DNA of 64,000 nucleotides from IMG/VR virus record IMGVR_UViG_3300027793_000052, positions 248,001 to 312,000 of that record, one strand, 5' to 3'. The first letter of the stretch is position 1; every line of letters starts with the position of its first letter. A program made the position numbers and the translations under genes. The notes below the pieces were generated by a model. That model had not been told where the DNA came from and did not search any database. It saw only the letters and a program-made list of their open reading frames with translations. This document shows positions 2 through 46,867 of the stretch, in pieces.

Positions 2-3000
2 GGTTACATAGCTGCTTCACAATTTTTAGATGAAGATAAATATAAACCACAACAAATATTAAGAGAAAAATACAAAGCCACTAAAATACATTACAACAAT
101 CAAGAATTGGATAGTGATATAGATGATACATCACCATTTTCACCTTGGTGTGACAATACGGCTATAGGTGATAATAGATGTACTACTATAATGGATTTGG
201 TAAAACTTATTAATGTTTTTGAAAAAGACAACAAATCCAACATTATTAAAAGTCCGGAATTTTTTGAGTTACAAAACTTAGAGGCTCTACAAAAATTATT
301 GACACAATATCGTGACACTGTTACAACTTTAATTAATCAATTACAAAGCCAAAACTATCTTTTTGAAAATAGTGAGGCTTATAAAGATGAAAATTTACCA
401 CCACTTAAACAAAAATTAGTTTTAAATAACCCTGATCAAATTAATGAATTAAATAAACAAGATAGTGGTTTATTATACGGTTATTTTAATAAAAAAAATG
501 GTACATTTTTAAATTTAGTAAAAGATATTTTAATAAAAAAAATAACAAATAATGATGTTTATGGTGATAGGTATACTAATTGTTTAAGTGAGGGTTTTAA
601 CAATGATTATGTAAAAAGTATAGAAGAAAAAAATCCTGAAGAACAATTATATACTTTTTTTTATAATCTATTAGATAATAAACCTTTTCAATACGGTATT
701 TTAAAAGGAATGTCTTATGCTGATAGCAATCAGATACAAAAAGATAAAAACGGTCAAACAATAAGTTTTATAGATTTTGGTTTTATATTAAAAGATATTG
801 ACAATTCTTTAAAAATTTTAAATAACAACTCCTCAGACCCAAATCAACTTGGTGTAATAAATAAAAAAAGGTTAGAAGTTAATAAGGCAATCAATAATGT
901 TTTTAGCACAACAATTGGTTTTAAACCCTCAATAAGAAATATATTTACTGTCATACTATGTAACACTGAAACTTTTATTGACATATTAGTAGACTTACAA
1001 GTAAAGGCTGAAGAATACCATGAACAAAACACACAAGTAACACCAAATGGACAAGGTGATATTTTTTCTGGTTATGATAAAGTATACCCATGGCCAACTT
1101 ACATTGAAAAAGGTTATACACCCCCATCTGGTTCTGCCAAAAACCAAGGTGAAAAAGAAGTATATCCAGGTAGAAGATACCCTAATTGGGTTGAGTGTAT
1201 ATTTGTTGAAGATTTTTTAAAAGCATTAAAAAAGTTTAAAGAAGAGACAAAAATAATTGAAAATGATACAACTGGTATAGGTGGTTTTGACAATTATGTA
1301 CCAATAAACCCATTGGAGTCACCTTTGTGGTATGAAAACCCTACAAAATACAAAGATGTTCACGATAAAGAAACCACTTACAGGATTATAGGTGAAAGAG
1401 CTTTTATTAATTTAGATCACAGTTATTTTTCACCAATTAGAATGACACCTGACATGTTGGACATGCCATTAGGTATTAGAAGGAAAGAAACAGAATGGAA
1501 TCCTATTAAAAACACAGATAATGGTCAGGACGATATTGCATCTATATTAGGAGCAATGGATGCTTGGAATTTATTAAACAGTAAAGATGACGGTGATAAA
1601 ATAAGTCTTGAGTTAAATTTAATTCTTAAAGAAAATGATCCCGAAAAATTTATACAATCCGTATTAAGTCGTTTAAAAACAGACGGATTTAATTGGACGG
1701 AAAAAACAGCAGCAGAAATATCCAATTTAAATACTACAATATCAACTGGAAGTACGTTAGGTGCTTCATATGGTTTTAATTGGGATGACGTGTATTATGT
1801 ATTAGATACTGGTAATAATGGAATAAAGTTAGACACTCTTGGAAAAGTTGTTATTCATGCTAATCCACATAAAATGGATTTCAATAATTTATTTAAAATA
1901 ATACCAGCACCAAACGGATCACCTGAAAGTAGTACTAGACAAATAGAAATAACCAATGACAAATTAGTTAGTCAAATAAACAACTACTCCGATAAAATAT
2001 CGTTAGAAACTTCATTTATAAATTTTAATACTAAATCATTAGATGATGCAACAGATTACCCTAAAGATATAAATAAAATCACTTTAGATAAAAATGAAAA
2101 AGTTGGTTGGTTCATAACTTCATTAAGTAACCCACAACAATATATAACTTTGGCAATGTCAGATGTTAAAGAAGGTAAATTAACGGATTGGTACAAAAAC
2201 ACTGATATTAGTAAATTATCTATATCAAACATGGGTTTATTATCTTATTGGGACTACGATAATTTGAATGAAACATATGGAATTAGTTTTTTAACAGATG
2301 AAAACAATCAAGGTGATATATTTGGCAATAAAATTGATTTTAATGGTGATAATTTCCCTAAATTAGAAAATTTTTCTGATCCTAAAAGTACTAAAATAGA
2401 ACCGGAAGATAATATAACAGGTGAAGGTGTGGCAGGTGGTGACGGTATTTCTACACCATTCATATCAACACCATTATGGTTGGATAATATAAATAAATTT
2501 AGAACTAACGCAAGTGGAAGTAGATTAAAAACTAACTCTAGTGGTGGAATGGATACTGACGATAAAATTCAGTATAGAAATTTAGCTTATTTATTTTTAC
2601 ATACACTAAAAACCACCCCATTAATAACTAGATATACGTCTGATGATGGTTATTTATGGGATAAAAATAAAGCAATAGGTGCATCAAATCTTATAGATCA
2701 AGGTAAATCTTCTGACCCAGCATTAATACAATCATTAAGAGCTTTTATGATTAATGGTGGTATGGCGAAAGTACCAAAGGCTTGGTTACTAACACTTGGT
2801 TCTGAATTATGGAGATGGAAAATGTTTGTGGGTACTAAAACAATTAATGACAAAATAGTATGGAACAAACCTTTAACTTGTAAAAAATGTGATAAAGGCG
2901 ATAAACCCAATGGTTTTGACCCTTTAGCACAACCCGGATTTAATTATAACCCAACAGGTGGTACATACACAAAAAGATTGTATAAAAATTATACACTTGG

Positions 3001-42664: not shown

Positions 42665-43642
42665 ATGGGACAAATAGAATCCTCTTTACTATTAGACGTA
42701 ATTCAAGAAATTTTAGGTAACCCTAGAAAGGAAAACCGAACTAAAGGACAATTTTCATTTGATTGTCCGGTTTGTTCTGCCGAAAAAGATATGCCACAAG
42801 GTGATGGTAAAGGTAACTTTGAAGTTAATGTCAATAAAGGTGTTTACCACTGTTGGTCCTGTGGCGGGACTCATAAAACACATGGTTCCATAGGTAAATT
42901 AATAACCAAGTTTGGTCGTAAAGAACACAAGAAAAAACTAAAACAATTAGGTATCCAATTAGATGACGTTAAGTCACCAAAAAAGAAAGAAATACAAGAG
43001 GTAAGAGAAATACATTTACCTGAAGAATATACGCCCTTTGAAGGTACAAATTCTAACACTTTACCTTATAAAGAGGCTTGGAATTATTTGACCAAGAATA
43101 GAAATTTACCACCAGATATAATCTATAAATATAAAATGGGTTATACCACTGAAGGTGATTATGCCTTTAGAATTATTGTCCCTTCTTATGATAAAGACGG
43201 CAAGTTAAATTATTTCACAGGACGCACATGGTTATCCAAAAAGAAACCTAAATATAAAAACCCTGACCTACCTAGGGAAGAGGTTATTTTTAATGAACAA
43301 TTAATAAATTGGGATTCCACGATTTATATTGTGGAAGGACCTTTTGACCATATAGTGGTTTATAACTCCATACCAATGTTAGGTAAAGACCTACATTCAA
43401 AACTGTATGATAGTTTAATGAAAAAGGCCAATAGTTGGGTTGTTGTTCTGTTAGATGATGATGCTTGGGATAGAGCAAAACAAATATACTCACAACTTAA
43501 TGTGGGTAGGTTACATGGTAAAGTTAAAGTTATTAAAATGAAAGATGGTTATGACATATCACAGGTTAATGAAGAATTCGGTAGGGAAGGTGTAATAGAC
43601 GTTTTAAAATCATCCGTTAAATTAAAAGAAAGTATGTTATAA
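42665..43642 (+). CDS. dnaG: DNA primase (Zn-ribbon + TOPRIM)
   Basis: CPVC...HCWSC Zn site, RIIVPSYD..G.LNYFTGR, IYIVEGPFD and LLDDDA motifs. Confidence 0.9.
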   Translation: MGQIESSLLLDVIQEILGNPRKENRTKGQFSFDCPVCSAEKDMPQGDGKGNFEVNVNKGVYHCWSCGGTHKTHGSIGKLITKFGRKEHKKKLKQLGIQLDDVKSPKKKEIQEVREIHLPEEYTPFEGTNSNTLPYKEAWNYLTKNRNLPPDIIYKYKMGYTTEGDYAFRIIVPSYDKDGKLNYFTGRTWLSKKKPKYKNPDLPREEVIFNEQLINWDSTIYIVEGPFDHIVVYNSIPMLGKDLHSKLYDSLMKKANSWVVVLLDDDAWDRAKQIYSQLNVGRLHGKVKVIKMKDGYDISQVNEEFGREGVIDVLKSSVKLKESML

Positions 43643-43648
43643 TTTTTG

Positions 43649-43657
43649 ATATTTATA
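43649..43657 (+). promoter_or_regulatory. ATATTTATA candidate late-promoter motif
   Basis: 6 nt before the ATG at 43664. Confidence 0.45.
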
Positions 43658-43663
43658 ATTAAG

Positions 43664-43870
43664 ATGGGATTTAATAAAAGATATGTTAATAAAAAAATAA
43701 TTAAAACTGTTTTAAGTGAAGACGGTATTGATGCTTTGATAAATTTTATAAAAAAACCTGACGCTCTAATTATTGAGGATGTTTATTCACAAAAAGTTTG
43801 TGACATTATTTTGGACAACCAAAGTGGTGACGATATTTTAAACAAAATATTAAATATAGATAATGGCTAG
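43664..43870 (+). CDS. Small hypothetical protein
   Basis: ATG at 43664 (MGFNKRY...) preferred over the track TTG at 43646. Confidence 0.6.
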   Translation: MGFNKRYVNKKIIKTVLSEDGIDALINFIKKPDALIIEDVYSQKVCDIILDNQSGDDILNKILNIDNG

Positions 43871-44612
43871 AAAAAGAGATAGCGTTGTTTGGTTGGAACC
43901 TAAAGAACATGTTTATATACATAAAGTTACAAATGAAAAATTTAAATCTGTAACAGGTGTTTTATCCATGTTGGAACCTGAATTTAACTCTGAAGAAGTT
44001 GCATTAGCTATTTCTATGCAAGACCCCTCCAAGAAGAAGGAACAATATCAGAATATGTCTCAAGAGGAGATATTAGCCGAATGGAAACGTATTAACGATG
44101 AGGCTAATGAATATGGTACACAAATCCATGAAATAATGGAAAGGTATCTATTGGCTGACAAAATTTATATACCACAAGATGATTATGAAAGGGAATTAAT
44201 AACTAAATTTCAGGAGATAGATCCAATGACAAAAGGTACAATATACCCAGAAACTATTTTATTCTCTGAAAAACACAAATTGGCAGGTACTGCTGATATT
44301 ATAGAGGATTGTGGTGACTACTTTAATGTATGGGATTGGAAAACTAATAAAGCTTTCAGATTTATTTCGGAATATAACCATTGGTTAAATCCACCTGTAT
44401 CACACTTATCAGATTGTCAATATAATGTATACGCTTTACAATTATCAATCTACGCTTACATGTTTCAAATGGAAACTAAAAAGAAAGTGGGTAGATTGGG
44501 TATATTCTATTATGATAAAGAACAAGGATTTAAATTAATACCACTACCTTACATTGGTCTTGAGGCAAAGGCCGTACTAGATTATTGGGTAAATAAGAAC
44601 AACAAAAAATAA
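43863..44612 (+). CDS. PD-(D/E)XK exonuclease (RecB/Cas4-like superfamily)
   Basis: GTQIHEIME, LAGTADII, VWDWKT and YALQLSIYAYM motifs. Confidence 0.85.
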   Translation: MARKRDSVVWLEPKEHVYIHKVTNEKFKSVTGVLSMLEPEFNSEEVALAISMQDPSKKKEQYQNMSQEEILAEWKRINDEANEYGTQIHEIMERYLLADKIYIPQDDYERELITKFQEIDPMTKGTIYPETILFSEKHKLAGTADIIEDCGDYFNVWDWKTNKAFRFISEYNHWLNPPVSHLSDCQYNVYALQLSIYAYMFQMETKKKVGRLGIFYYDKEQGFKLIPLPYIGLEAKAVLDYWVNKNNKK

Positions 44613-44629
44613 ATAATTTGATATATTGA

Positions 44630-44689
44630 TTATTTTTTTATTTCTTTCCTTTTTCCCCCAGTCCACTTATATATTGGTTCTATTTTCAT
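44630..44689 (-). pseudogene. 19-codon remnant of a Dam/D12-class DNA adenine methyltransferase N-terminus
   Basis: The minus strand reads ATG AAA ATA GAA CCA ATA TAT AAG TGG ACT GGG GGA AAA AGG AAA GAA ATA AAA AAA TAA = MKIEPIYKWTGGKRKEIKK*. This matches the Dam motif-X start P..KW.GGK; no continuation in the other frames. Confidence 0.7.
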
Positions 44690-44783
44690 TTATTGATTTT
44701 TTATCAATAATAACTAAAATAAATAAAAAGTACATAAAAATATTTTTATTGTTGTGTATTTATATCATACAAAAACAAAAGTT

Positions 44784-45092
44784 ATGCAAGAATTAAATTC
44801 AATTACCTATCAAGAAAAAATTAATGAAAATAAACTAACATTAGTTAAGTATGCCGCAAATTGGTGTGGGCCATGTCGCATGTTAACACCCATCTTAAAT
44901 AAGGTGGTTGAAAATTATACCGATATTAATGTTGGTGAAGTTAATATTGACACACACCCTGATTTGGCTGTTAAAGATGGCATTAGAGGTGTACCGACAA
45001 TAGTTTTTTATAAAAATGGACAAGTTGTTGATAGAATGGTTGGATTACAACCGGCTCAAGTTTACCAATCTAAAATAGATAGTTTAAAATAA
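44784..45092 (+). CDS. trxA: Thioredoxin
   Basis: WCGPC active site and GIRGVPT motif. ATG at 44784. Confidence 0.93.
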   Translation: MQELNSITYQEKINENKLTLVKYAANWCGPCRMLTPILNKVVENYTDINVGEVNIDTHPDLAVKDGIRGVPTIVFYKNGQVVDRMVGLQPAQVYQSKIDSLK

Positions 45093-45098
45093 AAAATA

Positions 45099-45656
45099 TT
45101 AATCTCTAACACGAAATTCAATAGAAAGACGGTCAAATCCCATCCAACCTTTAACAATTATCCAACGATATTCAAGGTTTGATTGAGGAATAAAACCGTC
45201 TTTTAGTTGTATACCAATATTAGATTGTGAAATATTATCCAATATTTCTTGACCAACATTCAATCTAACACCATTAATAAATTTATTATAATTGGTGACA
45301 GCCAAATCATAATCCCCATAACCAAATATTTGAATAACTTTATTCACAGCATCATGACTAGCTACCTTAAAAATAGGTTCAGAATATAAAGTCCAATCCT
45401 TTAATTTATCTTTATTATATTTTTTAATTTCAACACCATCACCATTTGGTGTAATTGCGTCATACTTATGAAAGACACTACCTTCTATGGGATAAAACTT
45501 TGTTGGGTCAAAATCAACCGAAGATATTTTTTGAAAATTAGAACGACCACTTCCTGACCACTTAATTCTAGGTGACTTAGAAACACGACGCCAACCTAAG
45601 GTCTCACATATGGAATATTCAAAATCCACACCAGTTTTATTTCTACTTTGTCCCAT
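45099..45656 (-). CDS. Putative restriction-endonuclease-like PD-(D/E)XK nuclease (only intact minus-strand gene)
   Basis: 185 aa with ATG start; N-terminal G..FE helix and KYDAITPNGDGVEIKKY (D...ExK). It fills the gap between two + strand genes exactly. Confidence 0.6.
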   Translation of the reverse strand: MGQSRNKTGVDFEYSICETLGWRRVSKSPRIKWSGSGRSNFQKISSVDFDPTKFYPIEGSVFHKYDAITPNGDGVEIKKYNKDKLKDWTLYSEPIFKVASHDAVNKVIQIFGYGDYDLAVTNYNKFINGVRLNVGQEILDNISQSNIGIQLKDGFIPQSNLEYRWIIVKGWMGFDRLSIEFRVRD

Positions 45657-45684
45657 TTACAGATTAAGTATTTTAACGTATTAT
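45656..45684 (+). promoter_or_regulatory. Promoter TTTACA-N17-TATTAT upstream of the DUF4338 cluster
   Basis: TTTACA at 45656-45661, 17-nt spacer, TATTAT at 45679-45684. It overlaps the start codon of the divergent nuclease gene. Confidence 0.55.
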
Positions 45685-45718
45685 TGTAAGTATATAATAT
45701 TTTTTTAAAAAAGTAAAA

Positions 45719-46867
45719 ATGGCTGAAGTATTCGATACAAAATTAACACCTGAAGAAACAGAATATTTAACCAACAGATTGATGGGTTTTTATAGTGAGT
45801 TGGAAACTATTCAGGATTATTTCTTAGAACGTAAGAAAGAGAAGGTGGTTGATATTAACCATGATAAGTTCACAAAACTTATGTTCGATGATTATGGTAT
45901 CGAACCTAAAGATATGAAATTCGAGATTGAAATAATAGATGGTAAATTATTTAATCCAGCAACACAAATAATCACATCACTACCACTTGAATCTCAAATC
46001 GGTAGACAAATAATGATAGGTGTTAAAGAAACAAATACCAATAAGTACGTTGGGTTTATTCGTTTAGCTTCACCTGTTTTATCTATTAAACCACGTAATG
46101 ATTTATTTCAGGGGTTTAAAATCACAGCTAATGAAGTGAACAAATATATGATTAACGGTGCTATCATTGTACCCGTACAACCATTTGGTTATAACTATTT
46201 GGGTGGTAAGTTGTTGGCCTTGATTTGTTGTTCACATGAGGCAAGACAAATGTTAAAAGATAAATACGGTGATAAGATAGATACGGTATTTATGGAAACC
46301 ACATCACTTTATGGTGATATTAAAGGGGTTAGTCAATATGACGGTCTTAAACCTTTTATGAGATATGGTAGTATGACAGAATCCGACTTATTTTTATTCC
46401 CTAATGACGATGTTTTTATGGAAATTAGAAATGTGTTAAGACCATTATACGGTAAACCTGAATGGGGTGGTTCTATGGTTGACCCTGGTCCATCTGGCCC
46501 TAAGATGAGAGAATTTAATAAAATAATCTCTATATTAAAAAACCACTTAAGGGTTCAAAATCCACAGAAATATAAAGAATTTCATGACTTTACTAAGTCA
46601 CATATGAAAGCTAAAACCAAAAAAAGGTATTACTACTGTAATTACGGTTATGATAATATTGGGGCATATATATCTAGTGACGGTAAAGTACCTTTAGTTA
46701 AGAGAGATAATTGGGATAGATACCATTTAACTCACATGATTGATTGGTGGAAGTCAAAAGCACAAAACAGATACGAGACTTTAAAAAATGATGGTAGATT
46801 AAGAAACGATTTGGAGATATACACATTGGATAGGATTGAATCTGGTAATGTTGACATGGTAAGATAA
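45719..46867 (+). CDS. DUF4338 (Druantia DruA-like) domain protein, paralog 1
   Basis: GRQI, VGFIRLASPV....PRN, IVPVQPFGYNYLGGKLLALICCS and ETTSLYG....SQYDGL motifs. Confidence 0.7.
   Translation: MAEVFDTKLTPEETEYLTNRLMGFYSELETIQDYFLERKKEKVVDINHDKFTKLMFDDYGIEPKDMKFEIEIIDGKLFNPATQIITSLPLESQIGRQIMIGVKETNTNKYVGFIRLASPVLSIKPRNDLFQGFKITANEVNKYMINGAIIVPVQPFGYNYLGGKLLALICCSHEARQMLKDKYGDKIDTVFMETTSLYGDIKGVSQYDGLKPFMRYGSMTESDLFLFPNDDVFMEIRNVLRPLYGKPEWGGSMVDPGPSGPKMREFNKIISILKNHLRVQNPQKYKEFHDFTKSHMKAKTKKRYYYCNYGYDNIGAYISSDGKVPLVKRDNWDRYHLTHMIDWWKSKAQNRYETLKNDGRLRNDLEIYTLDRIESGNVDMVR

What the first reader, a model, noticed from the sequence alone, without database searches (positions are those of the whole stretch)
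44630..44689. Fossil N-terminus of a Dam methyltransferase hidden in an apparent intergenic gap
Seen: the odd pyrimidine-rich stretch on the + strand reads MKIEPIYKWTGGKRKEIKK* on the minus strand. Established: D12-class N6-adenine MTases (Dam, T4 Dam) start with P..KW(A/T/S)GGK. No frame continues the gene, and the neighbouring + strand nuclease stop is at 44612. Inference: a deletion removed most of dam and left the start and probable promoter region (44690-44760).
Basis: partly seen in the sequence, partly recalled or inferred. Interest (0 to 1): 0.68.

Follow-up and report, generated by a model that had tools for sequence, protein, structure and literature searches.

The report
Deletion scar of a phage Dam/restriction cassette
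The 19-codon reading frame is the leftover start of a Dam-type DNA methyltransferase gene, left when one 1,392-base deletion removed that gene and a neighbouring restriction-enzyme-like gene from a freshwater giant phage; the undeleted version still circulates in the same samples.

Summary
Window 44689..44630 (minus strand) reads MKIEPIYKWTGGKRKEIKK*, in the 171-nt gap between a PD-(D/E)XK exonuclease gene and a thioredoxin gene of a 318-kb uncultured freshwater jumbo phage.

- **Intact allele:** metagenome contig L105 (1,641 nt) has the same flanks.
- **What lies between them:** a 187-aa PD-(D/E)XK, restriction-endonuclease-like gene on the plus strand. Converging on it is an intact 289-aa Dam-family methyltransferase, whose first 18 residues equal the window's peptide.
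- **The deletion:** removing L105 nt 123-1514 (1,392 nt) gives window 44513-44761 exactly (249/249).
- **The junction:** it lies in a TTTTT run inside a roughly 28-nt imperfect direct repeat. Codon 19 straddles it, and the stop codon comes from the far side.

The deletion is real rather than an assembly error. Independent assemblies carry the same joint, and two samples hold both alleles, with the intact one at lower depth.

This is an ordinary kind of event, documented unusually cleanly. Interest is modest.

The parts
43863..44612 (+). PD-(D/E)XK exonuclease gene, the left neighbour; its stop is at 44610-44612
   Evidence: Pfam PDDEXK_1 at 32.6 bits and PHROG 298 exonuclease at E 4e-25. Its 3' end is identical to L105:1-100.
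44613..44634 (.). Intergenic sequence left of the deletion. In the intact allele it precedes the restriction-endonuclease-like gene.
   Evidence: Identical to L105:101-122.
44635..44639 (.). Deletion junction: a TTTTT microhomology that fits both sides
   Evidence: read laying reports the joint 122->1515, skipping 1392, with 5 letters fitting both sides. Reconstruction is 249/249 identical.
44618..44647 (.). Hybrid copy of the roughly 28-nt imperfect direct repeat that brackets the deleted segment in the intact allele (L105:106-134 and 1499-1527)
   Evidence: Three-way alignment. The two BLAST flanks overlap on window 44621-44647. Repeat sequences are printed.
44630..44689 (-). Remnant ORF of 19 codons plus TAA. 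Codons 1-18 (44689..44636) are the 5' end of the Dam-family methyltransferase gene. Codon 19 straddles the junction, and the stop comes from the left flank.
   Evidence: The first 18 residues are identical to the intact 289-aa L105 protein, and 16 of 19 match L020.
44690..44710 (.). Perfect 8-bp inverted repeat TTATTGAT-N5-ATCAATAA directly abutting the dam start codon. Its role is unknown; it could be an operator or regulatory site.
   Evidence: the repeat finder I20. It is retained identically in L105 and is not found upstream of other dam homologues.
44690..44783 (.). Retained upstream region of dam, the divergent spacer to thioredoxin. It is absent from relatives that lack the insert.
   Evidence: Identical to L105:1570-1641 as far as 44761, where the L105 contig ends. 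Relatives L001-L003 and L007-L009 have only 14-50 nt between nuclease and thioredoxin. The promoter scan was not above the shuffled background.
44784..45092 (+). Thioredoxin gene, the right neighbour
   Evidence: Pfam Thioredoxin at 88.9 bits.

Best explanation
Window 44630-44689 (minus strand) is a non-functional 5' relic of a Dam-family (D12-class) N6-adenine DNA methyltransferase gene.

An ancestor of this phage carried a roughly 1.56-kb insert between its exonuclease and thioredoxin genes. The insert held a 187-aa PD-(D/E)XK restriction-endonuclease-like gene on the plus strand. Converging on it with a 4-nt overlap was a 289-aa dam gene with its own upstream region. This looks like a compact type II restriction-modification cassette.

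A single 1,392-bp deletion then occurred between two imperfect direct repeats of about 28 nt, with the crossover in a TTTTT run. The likely mechanism is replication slippage or short-homology recombination (inferred). The deletion removed the whole endonuclease-like gene, including its start, and dam codons 19-289. It fused dam codons 1-18 to the spacer after the exonuclease gene, which supplies an immediate stop.

Losing both genes at once avoids the self-restriction that loss of the methyltransferase alone would risk (inference).

Shown: the homology, the intact allele, the exact junction, the coexistence of both alleles, and the nuclease fold and catalytic motif of the partner gene.

Inferred: the molecular mechanism of deletion, restriction activity, the methylation specificity, and any fitness effect.
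For: **Homology**
- The peptide and its frame are as described.
- KW.GGK occurs once in the window against 0.01 expected.
- Every full-length carrier of YKWTGGKRK is a D12 methyltransferase.
- The remnant is 84% identical to the L020 N-terminus.

**Intact allele**
- L105 holds R187 (140-703, plus strand) and M289 (1569..700, minus strand) between flanks matching the window.
- M289 scores 141 bits on PF02086, 180 bits on TIGR00571 dam (cut-off 114.85) and 216 bits on PADLOC MTase_II.
- M289 has the EPFFGGGAV and LDPPY motifs.

**Exact deletion**
- L105 minus nt 123-1514 equals window 44513-44761, 249/249.
- The repeats at the two ends are shown.

**Independent assemblies**
- The X13 contig (4,982 nt, depth 25) and the X17 contig carry the joint 122->1515, skipping 1,392 nt.
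- In X1 and X3, high-depth contigs (20 and 51) break at the branch points.
- In the same two runs, low-depth contigs (4.8 and 7.2) cover the cassette with 0 mismatches.
- The deletion allele is held complete in 11 runs from 10 studies.

**Partner gene**
- D86, E99 and K101 are invariant in 11 homologues.
- The AF2 model has pLDDT 81.
- Every fold match is a PD-(D/E)XK nuclease, many of them type II restriction enzymes.
- There is a weak HpyAIV-family hit (E 1e-6) and a TM of 0.70 to the HinfI/HpyAIV cluster.
- R187 homologues sit next to dam in about 25 loci, in two arrangements.

**No other copy**
- No other D12, N6_N4 or phage-Dam methyltransferase, and no copy of the cassette, lies elsewhere in the genome.
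Against: - L105 is only 1,641 nt long, so linkage of the intact allele to the rest of this phage rests on 249 nt of identical flanks plus Logan contigs that bridge the nuclease end into the cassette (X1 record 2, X3 record 20).
- Most runs are flagged as possible sources of the window, so they are not all independent. Only contigs, not raw reads, were available, so allele frequencies are rough.
- The endonuclease assignment is by fold, motif and gene context. The NCBIfam score is 28 bits, far below the equivalog cut-off of 160, and no Pfam family reaches its threshold.
- Whether the remnant is transcribed or translated is not known.
Confidence: 0.93

Rival explanations
1. Assembly artefact: the phage really carries the intact cassette, and the assembler collapsed it at the short repeat.
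For: Both alleles are present in runs X1 and X3, where the big contigs break exactly at the branch points. An assembler therefore had to choose a path.
Against: The same joint lies inside a 4,982-nt contig at depth 25 in X13 and in a contig of X17, both assembled independently by Logan. The window stretch is held at 100% of sampled words in 11 runs from 10 studies, 2017-2024. Flank depth (20 and 51) far exceeds cassette depth (about 4-7), so most molecules lack the cassette.
Confidence: 0.03
2. Reverse polarity: the window shows the ancestral empty site, and L105 gained the cassette by insertion.
For: The nuclease-thioredoxin junction is an insertion hotspot in relatives: a GIY-YIG homing endonuclease in L006, and other cargo in L004/L005 and L010-L012.
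Against: The window retains 54 nt of dam coding sequence in frame with its start codon, plus about 94 nt of dam-side spacer. Relatives with truly empty sites (L001-L003, L007-L009) lack both. An empty target cannot contain the first 18 codons of the incoming gene.
Confidence: 0.02
3. Chance resemblance: an AT-rich intergenic stretch that happens to encode a Dam-like N-terminus.
For: The ORF is only 19 codons, which is too short for Pfam or PDB searches.
Against: Expected motif count is 0.01 per window. The first 18 residues and 54 nt are identical to an intact gene with identical flanks.
Confidence: 0.005
4. The remnant is kept because it now has a use, for example as a translated micro-ORF, or as a spacer carrying a promoter or operator for thioredoxin.
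For: The ORF is intact and keeps its start context and the palindrome at 44690-44710. The deletion allele is the majority form in several samples.
Against: The flanks show zero substitutions relative to the intact allele, so the deletion is too recent for conservation to mean anything. The promoter scan is not above background. Relatives express thioredoxin with only 14-50 nt of spacer.
Confidence: 0.04

Closest known systems
Dam-family / D12-class N6-adenine DNA methyltransferases (PF02086, TIGR00571; E. coli Dam, T4 Dam, M.DpnIIA), including the Dam-type methylases reported as common in jumbo phages (PMC7824862)
   Same: The remnant carries the family's N-terminal P-x-x-KW-T-GGK segment at the normal distance from the start codon. 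The intact allele (L105) scores well above both curated cut-offs and has the FGGG and DPPY motifs.
   Different: The window copy keeps only 18 of 289 codons and lacks the SAM-binding and catalytic motifs, so it is a pseudogene fragment and not an enzyme. The closest cultured-phage homologues of the intact protein are only about 31% identical. Its target sequence is untested.
Type II restriction-modification cassettes as mobile, gain-and-loss elements flanked by direct repeats (Furuta, Abe and Kobayashi 2010, PMC2853133)
   Same: A two-gene unit, methyltransferase plus PD-(D/E)XK nuclease, is present in one genome and absent at the same site in a near-identical one, with short direct repeats at the boundaries.
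   Different: The carrier here is a virulent-type jumbo phage rather than a bacterial chromosome or prophage. The 'empty' site is not clean and keeps a gene stump, which marks loss by internal deletion rather than precise excision. Restriction activity is not demonstrated.
HinfI/HpyAIV family type II restriction endonucleases (PF09520, NF045832)
   Same: The deleted 187-aa protein shows weak sequence similarity (E 1e-6, residues 25-136) and a predicted-structure TM of 0.70 to that cluster. It also has a D...ExK catalytic motif.
   Different: It is about 80 residues shorter and scores 28 bits against a 160-bit cut-off. It is partnered with a D12 (Dam-type) methyltransferase. GANTC, which I recall from memory as the target of HinfI/HpyAIV, is not depleted in the genome, whereas GATC is.
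Short-homology (direct-repeat) deletions in phage and bacterial genomes
   Same: One copy of an imperfect repeat of about 28 nt remains, with the crossover in 5 nt of exact identity, and the intervening 1,392 nt is lost.
   Different: Nothing unusual. The mechanism (slippage versus annealing) cannot be told from sequence.

Membership tests
D12-class / Dam-family N6-adenine DNA methyltransferase (PF02086, TIGR00571) | N-terminal KW(A/T/S)GGK segment near the start of the protein | tested here: met
   The window peptide has YKWTGGKRK at residues 7-15 and aligns column for column with seven full-length family members.
D12-class / Dam-family N6-adenine DNA methyltransferase (PF02086, TIGR00571) | SAM-binding motif I (FxGxG) and catalytic motif IV (DPPY) | tested here: not met
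   Both are absent from the window, where no frame continues the gene. Both are present in the intact allele L105 as EPFFGGGAV and LDPPY.
D12-class / Dam-family N6-adenine DNA methyltransferase (PF02086, TIGR00571) | Profile score above the curated cut-off | tested here: not met
   No PF02086 match anywhere in the 318-kb genome. L105 M289 scores 141 bits (cut-off 22) and 180 bits on TIGR00571 (cut-off 114.85). The window feature therefore derives from the family but is not a functional member.
Type II restriction-modification system (the deleted cassette, as seen in L105) | Adjacent methyltransferase and endonuclease genes whose linkage is conserved | tested here: met
   R187 and M289 converge with a 4-nt overlap. 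R187 homologues flank dam in about 25 loci, either convergent or in tandem.
Type II restriction-modification system (the deleted cassette, as seen in L105) | Endonuclease with a PD-(D/E)XK fold and catalytic D...(D/E)XK residues | tested here: met
   D86, E99 and K101 are invariant. AF2 pLDDT is 81. All fold hits are PD-(D/E)XK nucleases.
Type II restriction-modification system (the deleted cassette, as seen in L105) | Membership of a named restriction-enzyme family | tested here: inconclusive
   NF045832 HpyAIV scores 28 bits against a cut-off of 160. No Pfam family passes. No PADLOC hit. Atlas structure TM is 0.70 to the HinfI/HpyAIV cluster.
Type II restriction-modification system (the deleted cassette, as seen in L105) | Site-specific cleavage that is blocked by the cognate methylation | not testable with these tools
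   This needs enzyme assays.
Direct-repeat (short-homology) deletion | A repeat at both ends of the segment in the intact allele, with a single hybrid copy at the junction | tested here: met
   L105:106-134 and 1499-1527 are imperfect repeats with a shared TTTTT. The window has one hybrid copy. The joint has 5 letters fitting both sides.

The most novel reading that the evidence does not exclude
The lost cassette may be a working phage-borne type II restriction-modification system. It would be built from a Dam-family methyltransferase and a previously undescribed compact (about 185 aa) viral branch of the HinfI/HpyAIV-like endonucleases. It would segregate as a presence/absence polymorphism within one natural jumbo-phage population, for example as a weapon against host DNA or co-infecting phages that is repeatedly gained and lost. 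The genome's strong GATC avoidance may be linked to this conflict.
Probability: 0.4. Interest if true: 0.55.

Novelty: new member of a known kind. Interest (0 to 1): 0.36.

Why it matters
This is a clean, base-exact example of how accessory defence or offence genes are shed from a giant phage genome. The parent and the deletion derivative are both recovered from the same environmental samples, and the repeat that mediated the loss is visible.

It also shows that a very short reading frame in an 'intergenic' gap can be a dependable marker of recent gene loss.

The deleted partner gene points to an uncharacterised, mostly viral group of small restriction-endonuclease-like proteins. These are linked to Dam-type methyltransferases and could be tested as new restriction enzymes.

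For annotation, the practical result is that 44630-44689 should be labelled a dam pseudogene remnant rather than a gene. This phage strain has no D12 (PF02086), N6_N4 (PF01555) or phage-Dam (PF05869) family methyltransferase.

Tried and rejected
- **Megablast against cultured phages.** Window 43600-45700 found nothing.
- **Relatives fetched through the nuclease.** The 18 IMG/VR loci show no dam at the junction. On their own they would have wrongly suggested that no longer allele exists.
- **Dam-bearing IMG/VR contigs.** These lack the window's nuclease. Only L025/L040 is syntenic, through the DruA-like and downstream genes. There dam-R is in tandem on the other strand. It therefore shows the same neighbourhood, not the same allele.
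- **Sequence upstream of dam.** It is not conserved among dam loci, so no shared promoter or operator could be defined.
- **Promoter and terminator scan of 44400-45000.** It gave no signal above shuffled background.
- **A 22-nt A-rich match.** Window 44708-44729 matches the L008/L009 nuclease-thioredoxin junction. It is low-complexity sequence and was not pursued as evidence of a target duplication.
- **Weak tblastn similarity of M289 to the DruA-like gene.** The hit (E 0.057) proved to be a motif-less 26% match and was rejected as chance.
- **Foldseek and VIA matches of R187.** These stay below Z 8 and TM 0.5 against solved structures, so only the fold class is claimed, not a family.

Full report
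**Setting**

The window is positions 248001-312000 of a 317,983-nt IMG/VR virus record, judged 96% complete. It is an AT-rich (30% G+C) uncultured freshwater jumbo phage. Its nearest cultured relatives are very distant: the primase is 30% identical to Flavobacterium phages, and megablast against phage records finds nothing.

The finding lies in a replication and recombination gene block, in this order:
- primase (42665-43642, plus strand);
- a 74-aa ORF;
- a PD-(D/E)XK exonuclease (43863-44612, plus strand);
- a 171-nt gap;
- thioredoxin (44784-45092, plus strand);
- a 185-aa ORF on the minus strand;
- a DruA-like gene (45719-46867, plus strand).

**Observation**

The minus strand from 44689 to 44630 reads ATG...TAA = MKIEPIYKWTGGKRKEIKK*. 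The other two frames do not continue a methyltransferase and run into the antisense of the exonuclease gene.

This is not a chance ORF:
- A back-translated KW.GGK motif occurs once in the window, against 0.01 expected from dinucleotide-preserving shuffles.
- The back-translated 9-mer YKWTGGKRK was scanned through IMG/VR (12 loci) and the JGI/ENA metagenome contigs (56 loci).
- Apart from the window's own contig (L117, 100% identical to the window) and one off-pattern hit (L123), every hit sits 4-16 residues behind the start of a methyltransferase ORF. These ORFs are about 290 aa where whole; some are cut by contig ends and a few are decayed.
- Six of these ORFs were scanned and all are MethyltransfD12, at 126-143 bits against a cut-off of 22.
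- The remnant aligns without gaps to their N-termini. It is 84% identical to L020, whose DNA is 82% identical over the same 56 nt. Most differences are synonymous.

**The intact allele**

The decisive hit is L105, a 1,641-nt metagenome contig.
- L105:1-134 matches window 44513-44647, and L105:1501-1641 matches window 44621-44761.
- Between these flanks L105 carries two genes.
- The first is a 187-aa ORF on the plus strand (140-703), here called R187.
- The second, converging on it with a 4-nt overlap, is a 289-aa ORF on the minus strand (1569..700), here called M289. It starts MKIEPIYKWTGGKRKEIKTFSKYYPDF.
- M289 is a complete Dam-family enzyme. It scores 141 bits on PF02086, 180 bits on TIGR00571 'dam' (cut-off 114.85) and 216 bits on PADLOC type II MTase. 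It has the EPFFGGGAV and LDPPY motifs.
- Removing L105 nt 123-1514 (1,392 nt) reproduces window 44513-44761 exactly, 249 of 249 bases.

The apparent 97-98% identity of the BLAST flanks has a simple cause. Each alignment ran a few bases into the other copy of a repeat.

**The junction**

In L105 the deleted segment is bracketed by an imperfect direct repeat of about 28 nt:
- TTGATATATTGATTATTTTTTTTATCTTT at 106-134;
- TAATATTTTGAAAATGTTTTTATTTCTTT at 1499-1527.

The two copies share an exact TTTTT, and the crossover lies within it (window 44635-44639).

The consequences for the reading frame are:
- Dam codons 1-18 (44689..44636) are original.
- Codon 19 (AAA) straddles the joint.
- The TAA stop belongs to the spacer that follows the exonuclease gene.
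- The left end point lies upstream of the R187 start codon, so nothing of that gene remains.
- The sequence upstream of dam, including a perfect palindrome TTATTGAT-N5-ATCAATAA that touches the start codon, is retained unchanged as far as L105 reaches (44761).

**Polarity**

The window must be the derived state, because an empty target site cannot contain the first 18 codons of the incoming gene.

Relatives with truly empty sites exist. In L001-L003 and L007-L009 (nuclease 79-91% identical) only 14-50 nt separate the nuclease stop from the thioredoxin start. They have neither the stump nor the 94-nt spacer.

The history is therefore in two steps. First, about 1.56 kb of cargo was inserted between the nuclease and thioredoxin genes. 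Second, the 1,392-bp deletion occurred.

The same junction is a general cargo hotspot:
- L006 carries a GIY-YIG homing endonuclease there (34.5 bits).
- L004/L005 carry broken ORF pieces there.
- L010-L012 carry a 140-aa ORF there.

A more distant syntenic relative, L025/L040, carries dam followed by an R187 homologue in tandem. The pair lies directly upstream of its DruA-like gene.

**Not a misassembly, and polymorphic in nature**

The window stretch 44000-45400 is held at 100% of sampled 31-mers in the Logan contigs of 11 runs from 10 studies, dated 2017-2024. Most of these are flagged as possible sources, so they are not all independent.

Contigs of four runs were laid on L105 (1,641 letters, within the operators' limit), with these results:
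- **X13:** a 4,982-nt contig at depth 25 passes 1-122 and continues directly at 1515-1641. This is a joint skipping 1,392 nt, with 5 letters fitting both sides.
- **X17:** this run is not flagged as a possible source and shows the same joint.
- **X1 and X3, deletion allele:** the large contigs (depth 20 and 51) end at L105:127 and resume at 1501/1515.
- **X1 and X3, intact allele:** separate low-depth contigs (4.8 and 7.2) cover 98-444, 505-832 and 1020-1174 in X1, and 98-1212 in X3. All have zero mismatches.

Both alleles therefore coexist in the same samples, and the cassette-bearing one is at lower contig depth. Contig depths are only a rough guide to frequency.

The flanks of the two alleles are identical, so the deletion is recent at the scale of point substitutions.

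**What was deleted with dam**

R187 has no Pfam family above threshold. Its best hit is Card1-like endonuclease at E 0.038. It has no PADLOC hit.

The evidence that it is a nuclease is as follows:
- It has a weak match to the HpyAIV family of type II restriction enzymes: E 1e-6 and 28 bits against a cut-off of 160.
- Eleven homologues from dam-adjacent loci align with invariant D86, E99 and K101, the D...ExK signature.
- An AlphaFold2 model built on that alignment has mean pLDDT 81 and pTM 0.80.
- By Foldseek, it matches only PD-(D/E)XK nucleases, including R2 restriction-like endonuclease domains, cap-snatching endonucleases, Cas4-like proteins and EcoO109I.
- By VIA-align, the matches reach Z up to 7.7 and include EcoO109I, BspD6I, PspGI, EcoRII, HindIII, PfoI, Bse634I, Cfr10I and NgoMIV. 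No single match stands out.
- The ESM Atlas places it among mostly viral 'hypothetical' clusters (score 0.97). Its stored model aligns at TM 0.70 to the HinfI/HpyAIV cluster.
- R187 homologues lie next to the dam homologue in about 25 of the fetched loci. Most are convergent, and one lineage has them in tandem. Conserved linkage in two arrangements is what a functional gene pair would show.

I therefore read the lost segment as a type II restriction-modification-like cassette. Cleavage activity and specificity are inferred, not shown.

**State of the present genome**

The 318-kb genome has no other D12, N6_N4 or phage-Dam type methyltransferase. It has no second copy of the cassette.

GATC is the second most under-represented tetranucleotide: 306 observed against 817 expected, a ratio of 0.37. 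GANTC is not depleted, at 0.87. This fits long-term exposure to GATC-directed restriction and a Dam (GATC) specificity for M289. It is circumstantial.

**Mechanism and consequences (inference)**

The repeat structure points to replication slippage or short-homology annealing. Removing the endonuclease-like gene together with most of the methyltransferase is the 'safe' way to lose such a pair, because a methyltransferase-only loss would expose the phage's own DNA.

The stump is most likely inert. There has been no time for selection to act on it, and the promoter scan gives nothing above background.

**Comparison with what is known**

Dam-type methylases are reported as common in jumbo phages (PMC7824862). 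Restriction-modification units flanked by direct repeats, present in one genome and absent from a close relative, are well described in bacteria (PMC2853133).

The present case is a new instance of these known phenomena. It has three less common features:
- the carrier is a jumbo phage;
- the parent and the derivative were both caught in the same metagenomes;
- the endonuclease-like partner belongs to an uncharacterised, mainly viral group.

**Limits**

- Only contigs, not raw reads, were available.
- L105 is short.
- Enzyme activities are untested.
- No alternative genetic code was used.

Noticed in passing
whole genome G000 (window included): GATC is strongly avoided: 306 observed against 817 expected by a Markov model, a ratio of 0.37. 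It is the second lowest of all 256 tetranucleotides, after GCGC. GANTC is near expectation at 0.87.
   Followed up: partly
L006:6798-7481 (the same nuclease-thioredoxin junction in a relative): A 228-aa GIY-YIG homing-endonuclease ORF (Pfam 34.5 bits) occupies the junction where the window has the dam stump. The junction is a recurrent cargo insertion hotspot.
   Followed up: partly
L004:6730-7135 and L005:6730-7135: About 370 nt of broken ORF pieces lie at the same junction, including a '...DIHGDKYDYS...' stretch of the kind seen in homing-endonuclease-associated proteins (recalled from memory). L004 and L005 differ by a frameshift. This looks like another decaying insert. Pfam gave no hit.
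   Followed up: partly
L010:2061-2480, L011:6740-7159, L012 (same junction): A 140-aa acidic ORF of unknown function, with no Pfam hit, sits between the nuclease and thioredoxin genes in a third set of relatives.
   Followed up: no
L025/L040:359-1806: In a more distant syntenic jumbo-phage fragment, dam and the R187 homologue are in tandem on the same strand. They lie directly upstream of the DruA-like gene, which is 63% identical to window 45719-46867. The cassette therefore occurs in a second arrangement in the same variable neighbourhood.
   Followed up: partly
L108:3340-3498; L125; L133; L143: Other decayed copies of the same dam family turned up. L108 keeps only about residues 3-40, followed by an unrelated G+C-richer stretch. 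L125 is truncated after about residue 184. L133 and L143 are frameshifted. Loss or decay of this gene seems recurrent, although some cases may be assembly errors.
   Followed up: partly
window 44690-44710: A perfect 8-bp inverted repeat, TTATTGAT-N5-ATCAATAA, directly abuts the dam start codon. It is retained in both alleles and absent upstream of other dam homologues. Its role is unknown.
   Followed up: partly
upstream of dam in L100, L152, L136, L131, L133: A triple direct repeat, tgtgaaaaa(tg), lies about 40-70 nt upstream of the dam start in the closest non-allelic dam loci. It may be a regulatory element of that cassette lineage.
   Followed up: no
window 45719-46867 (plus strand): A 382-aa protein matches the Druantia DruA family (PF14236, E 5e-15) and PHROG 19197 (E 5e-90). 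It is conserved next to this locus in all relatives, and several relatives have a weaker second match a few kb downstream (about 31% identity). A defence-system-like protein encoded by a phage.
   Followed up: no
window 45099-45656 (minus strand): A 185-aa ORF on the opposite strand to all its neighbours has no Pfam or PHROG hit. It is conserved (51-66% identity) in most relatives that have thioredoxin, but is absent in L003.
   Followed up: no
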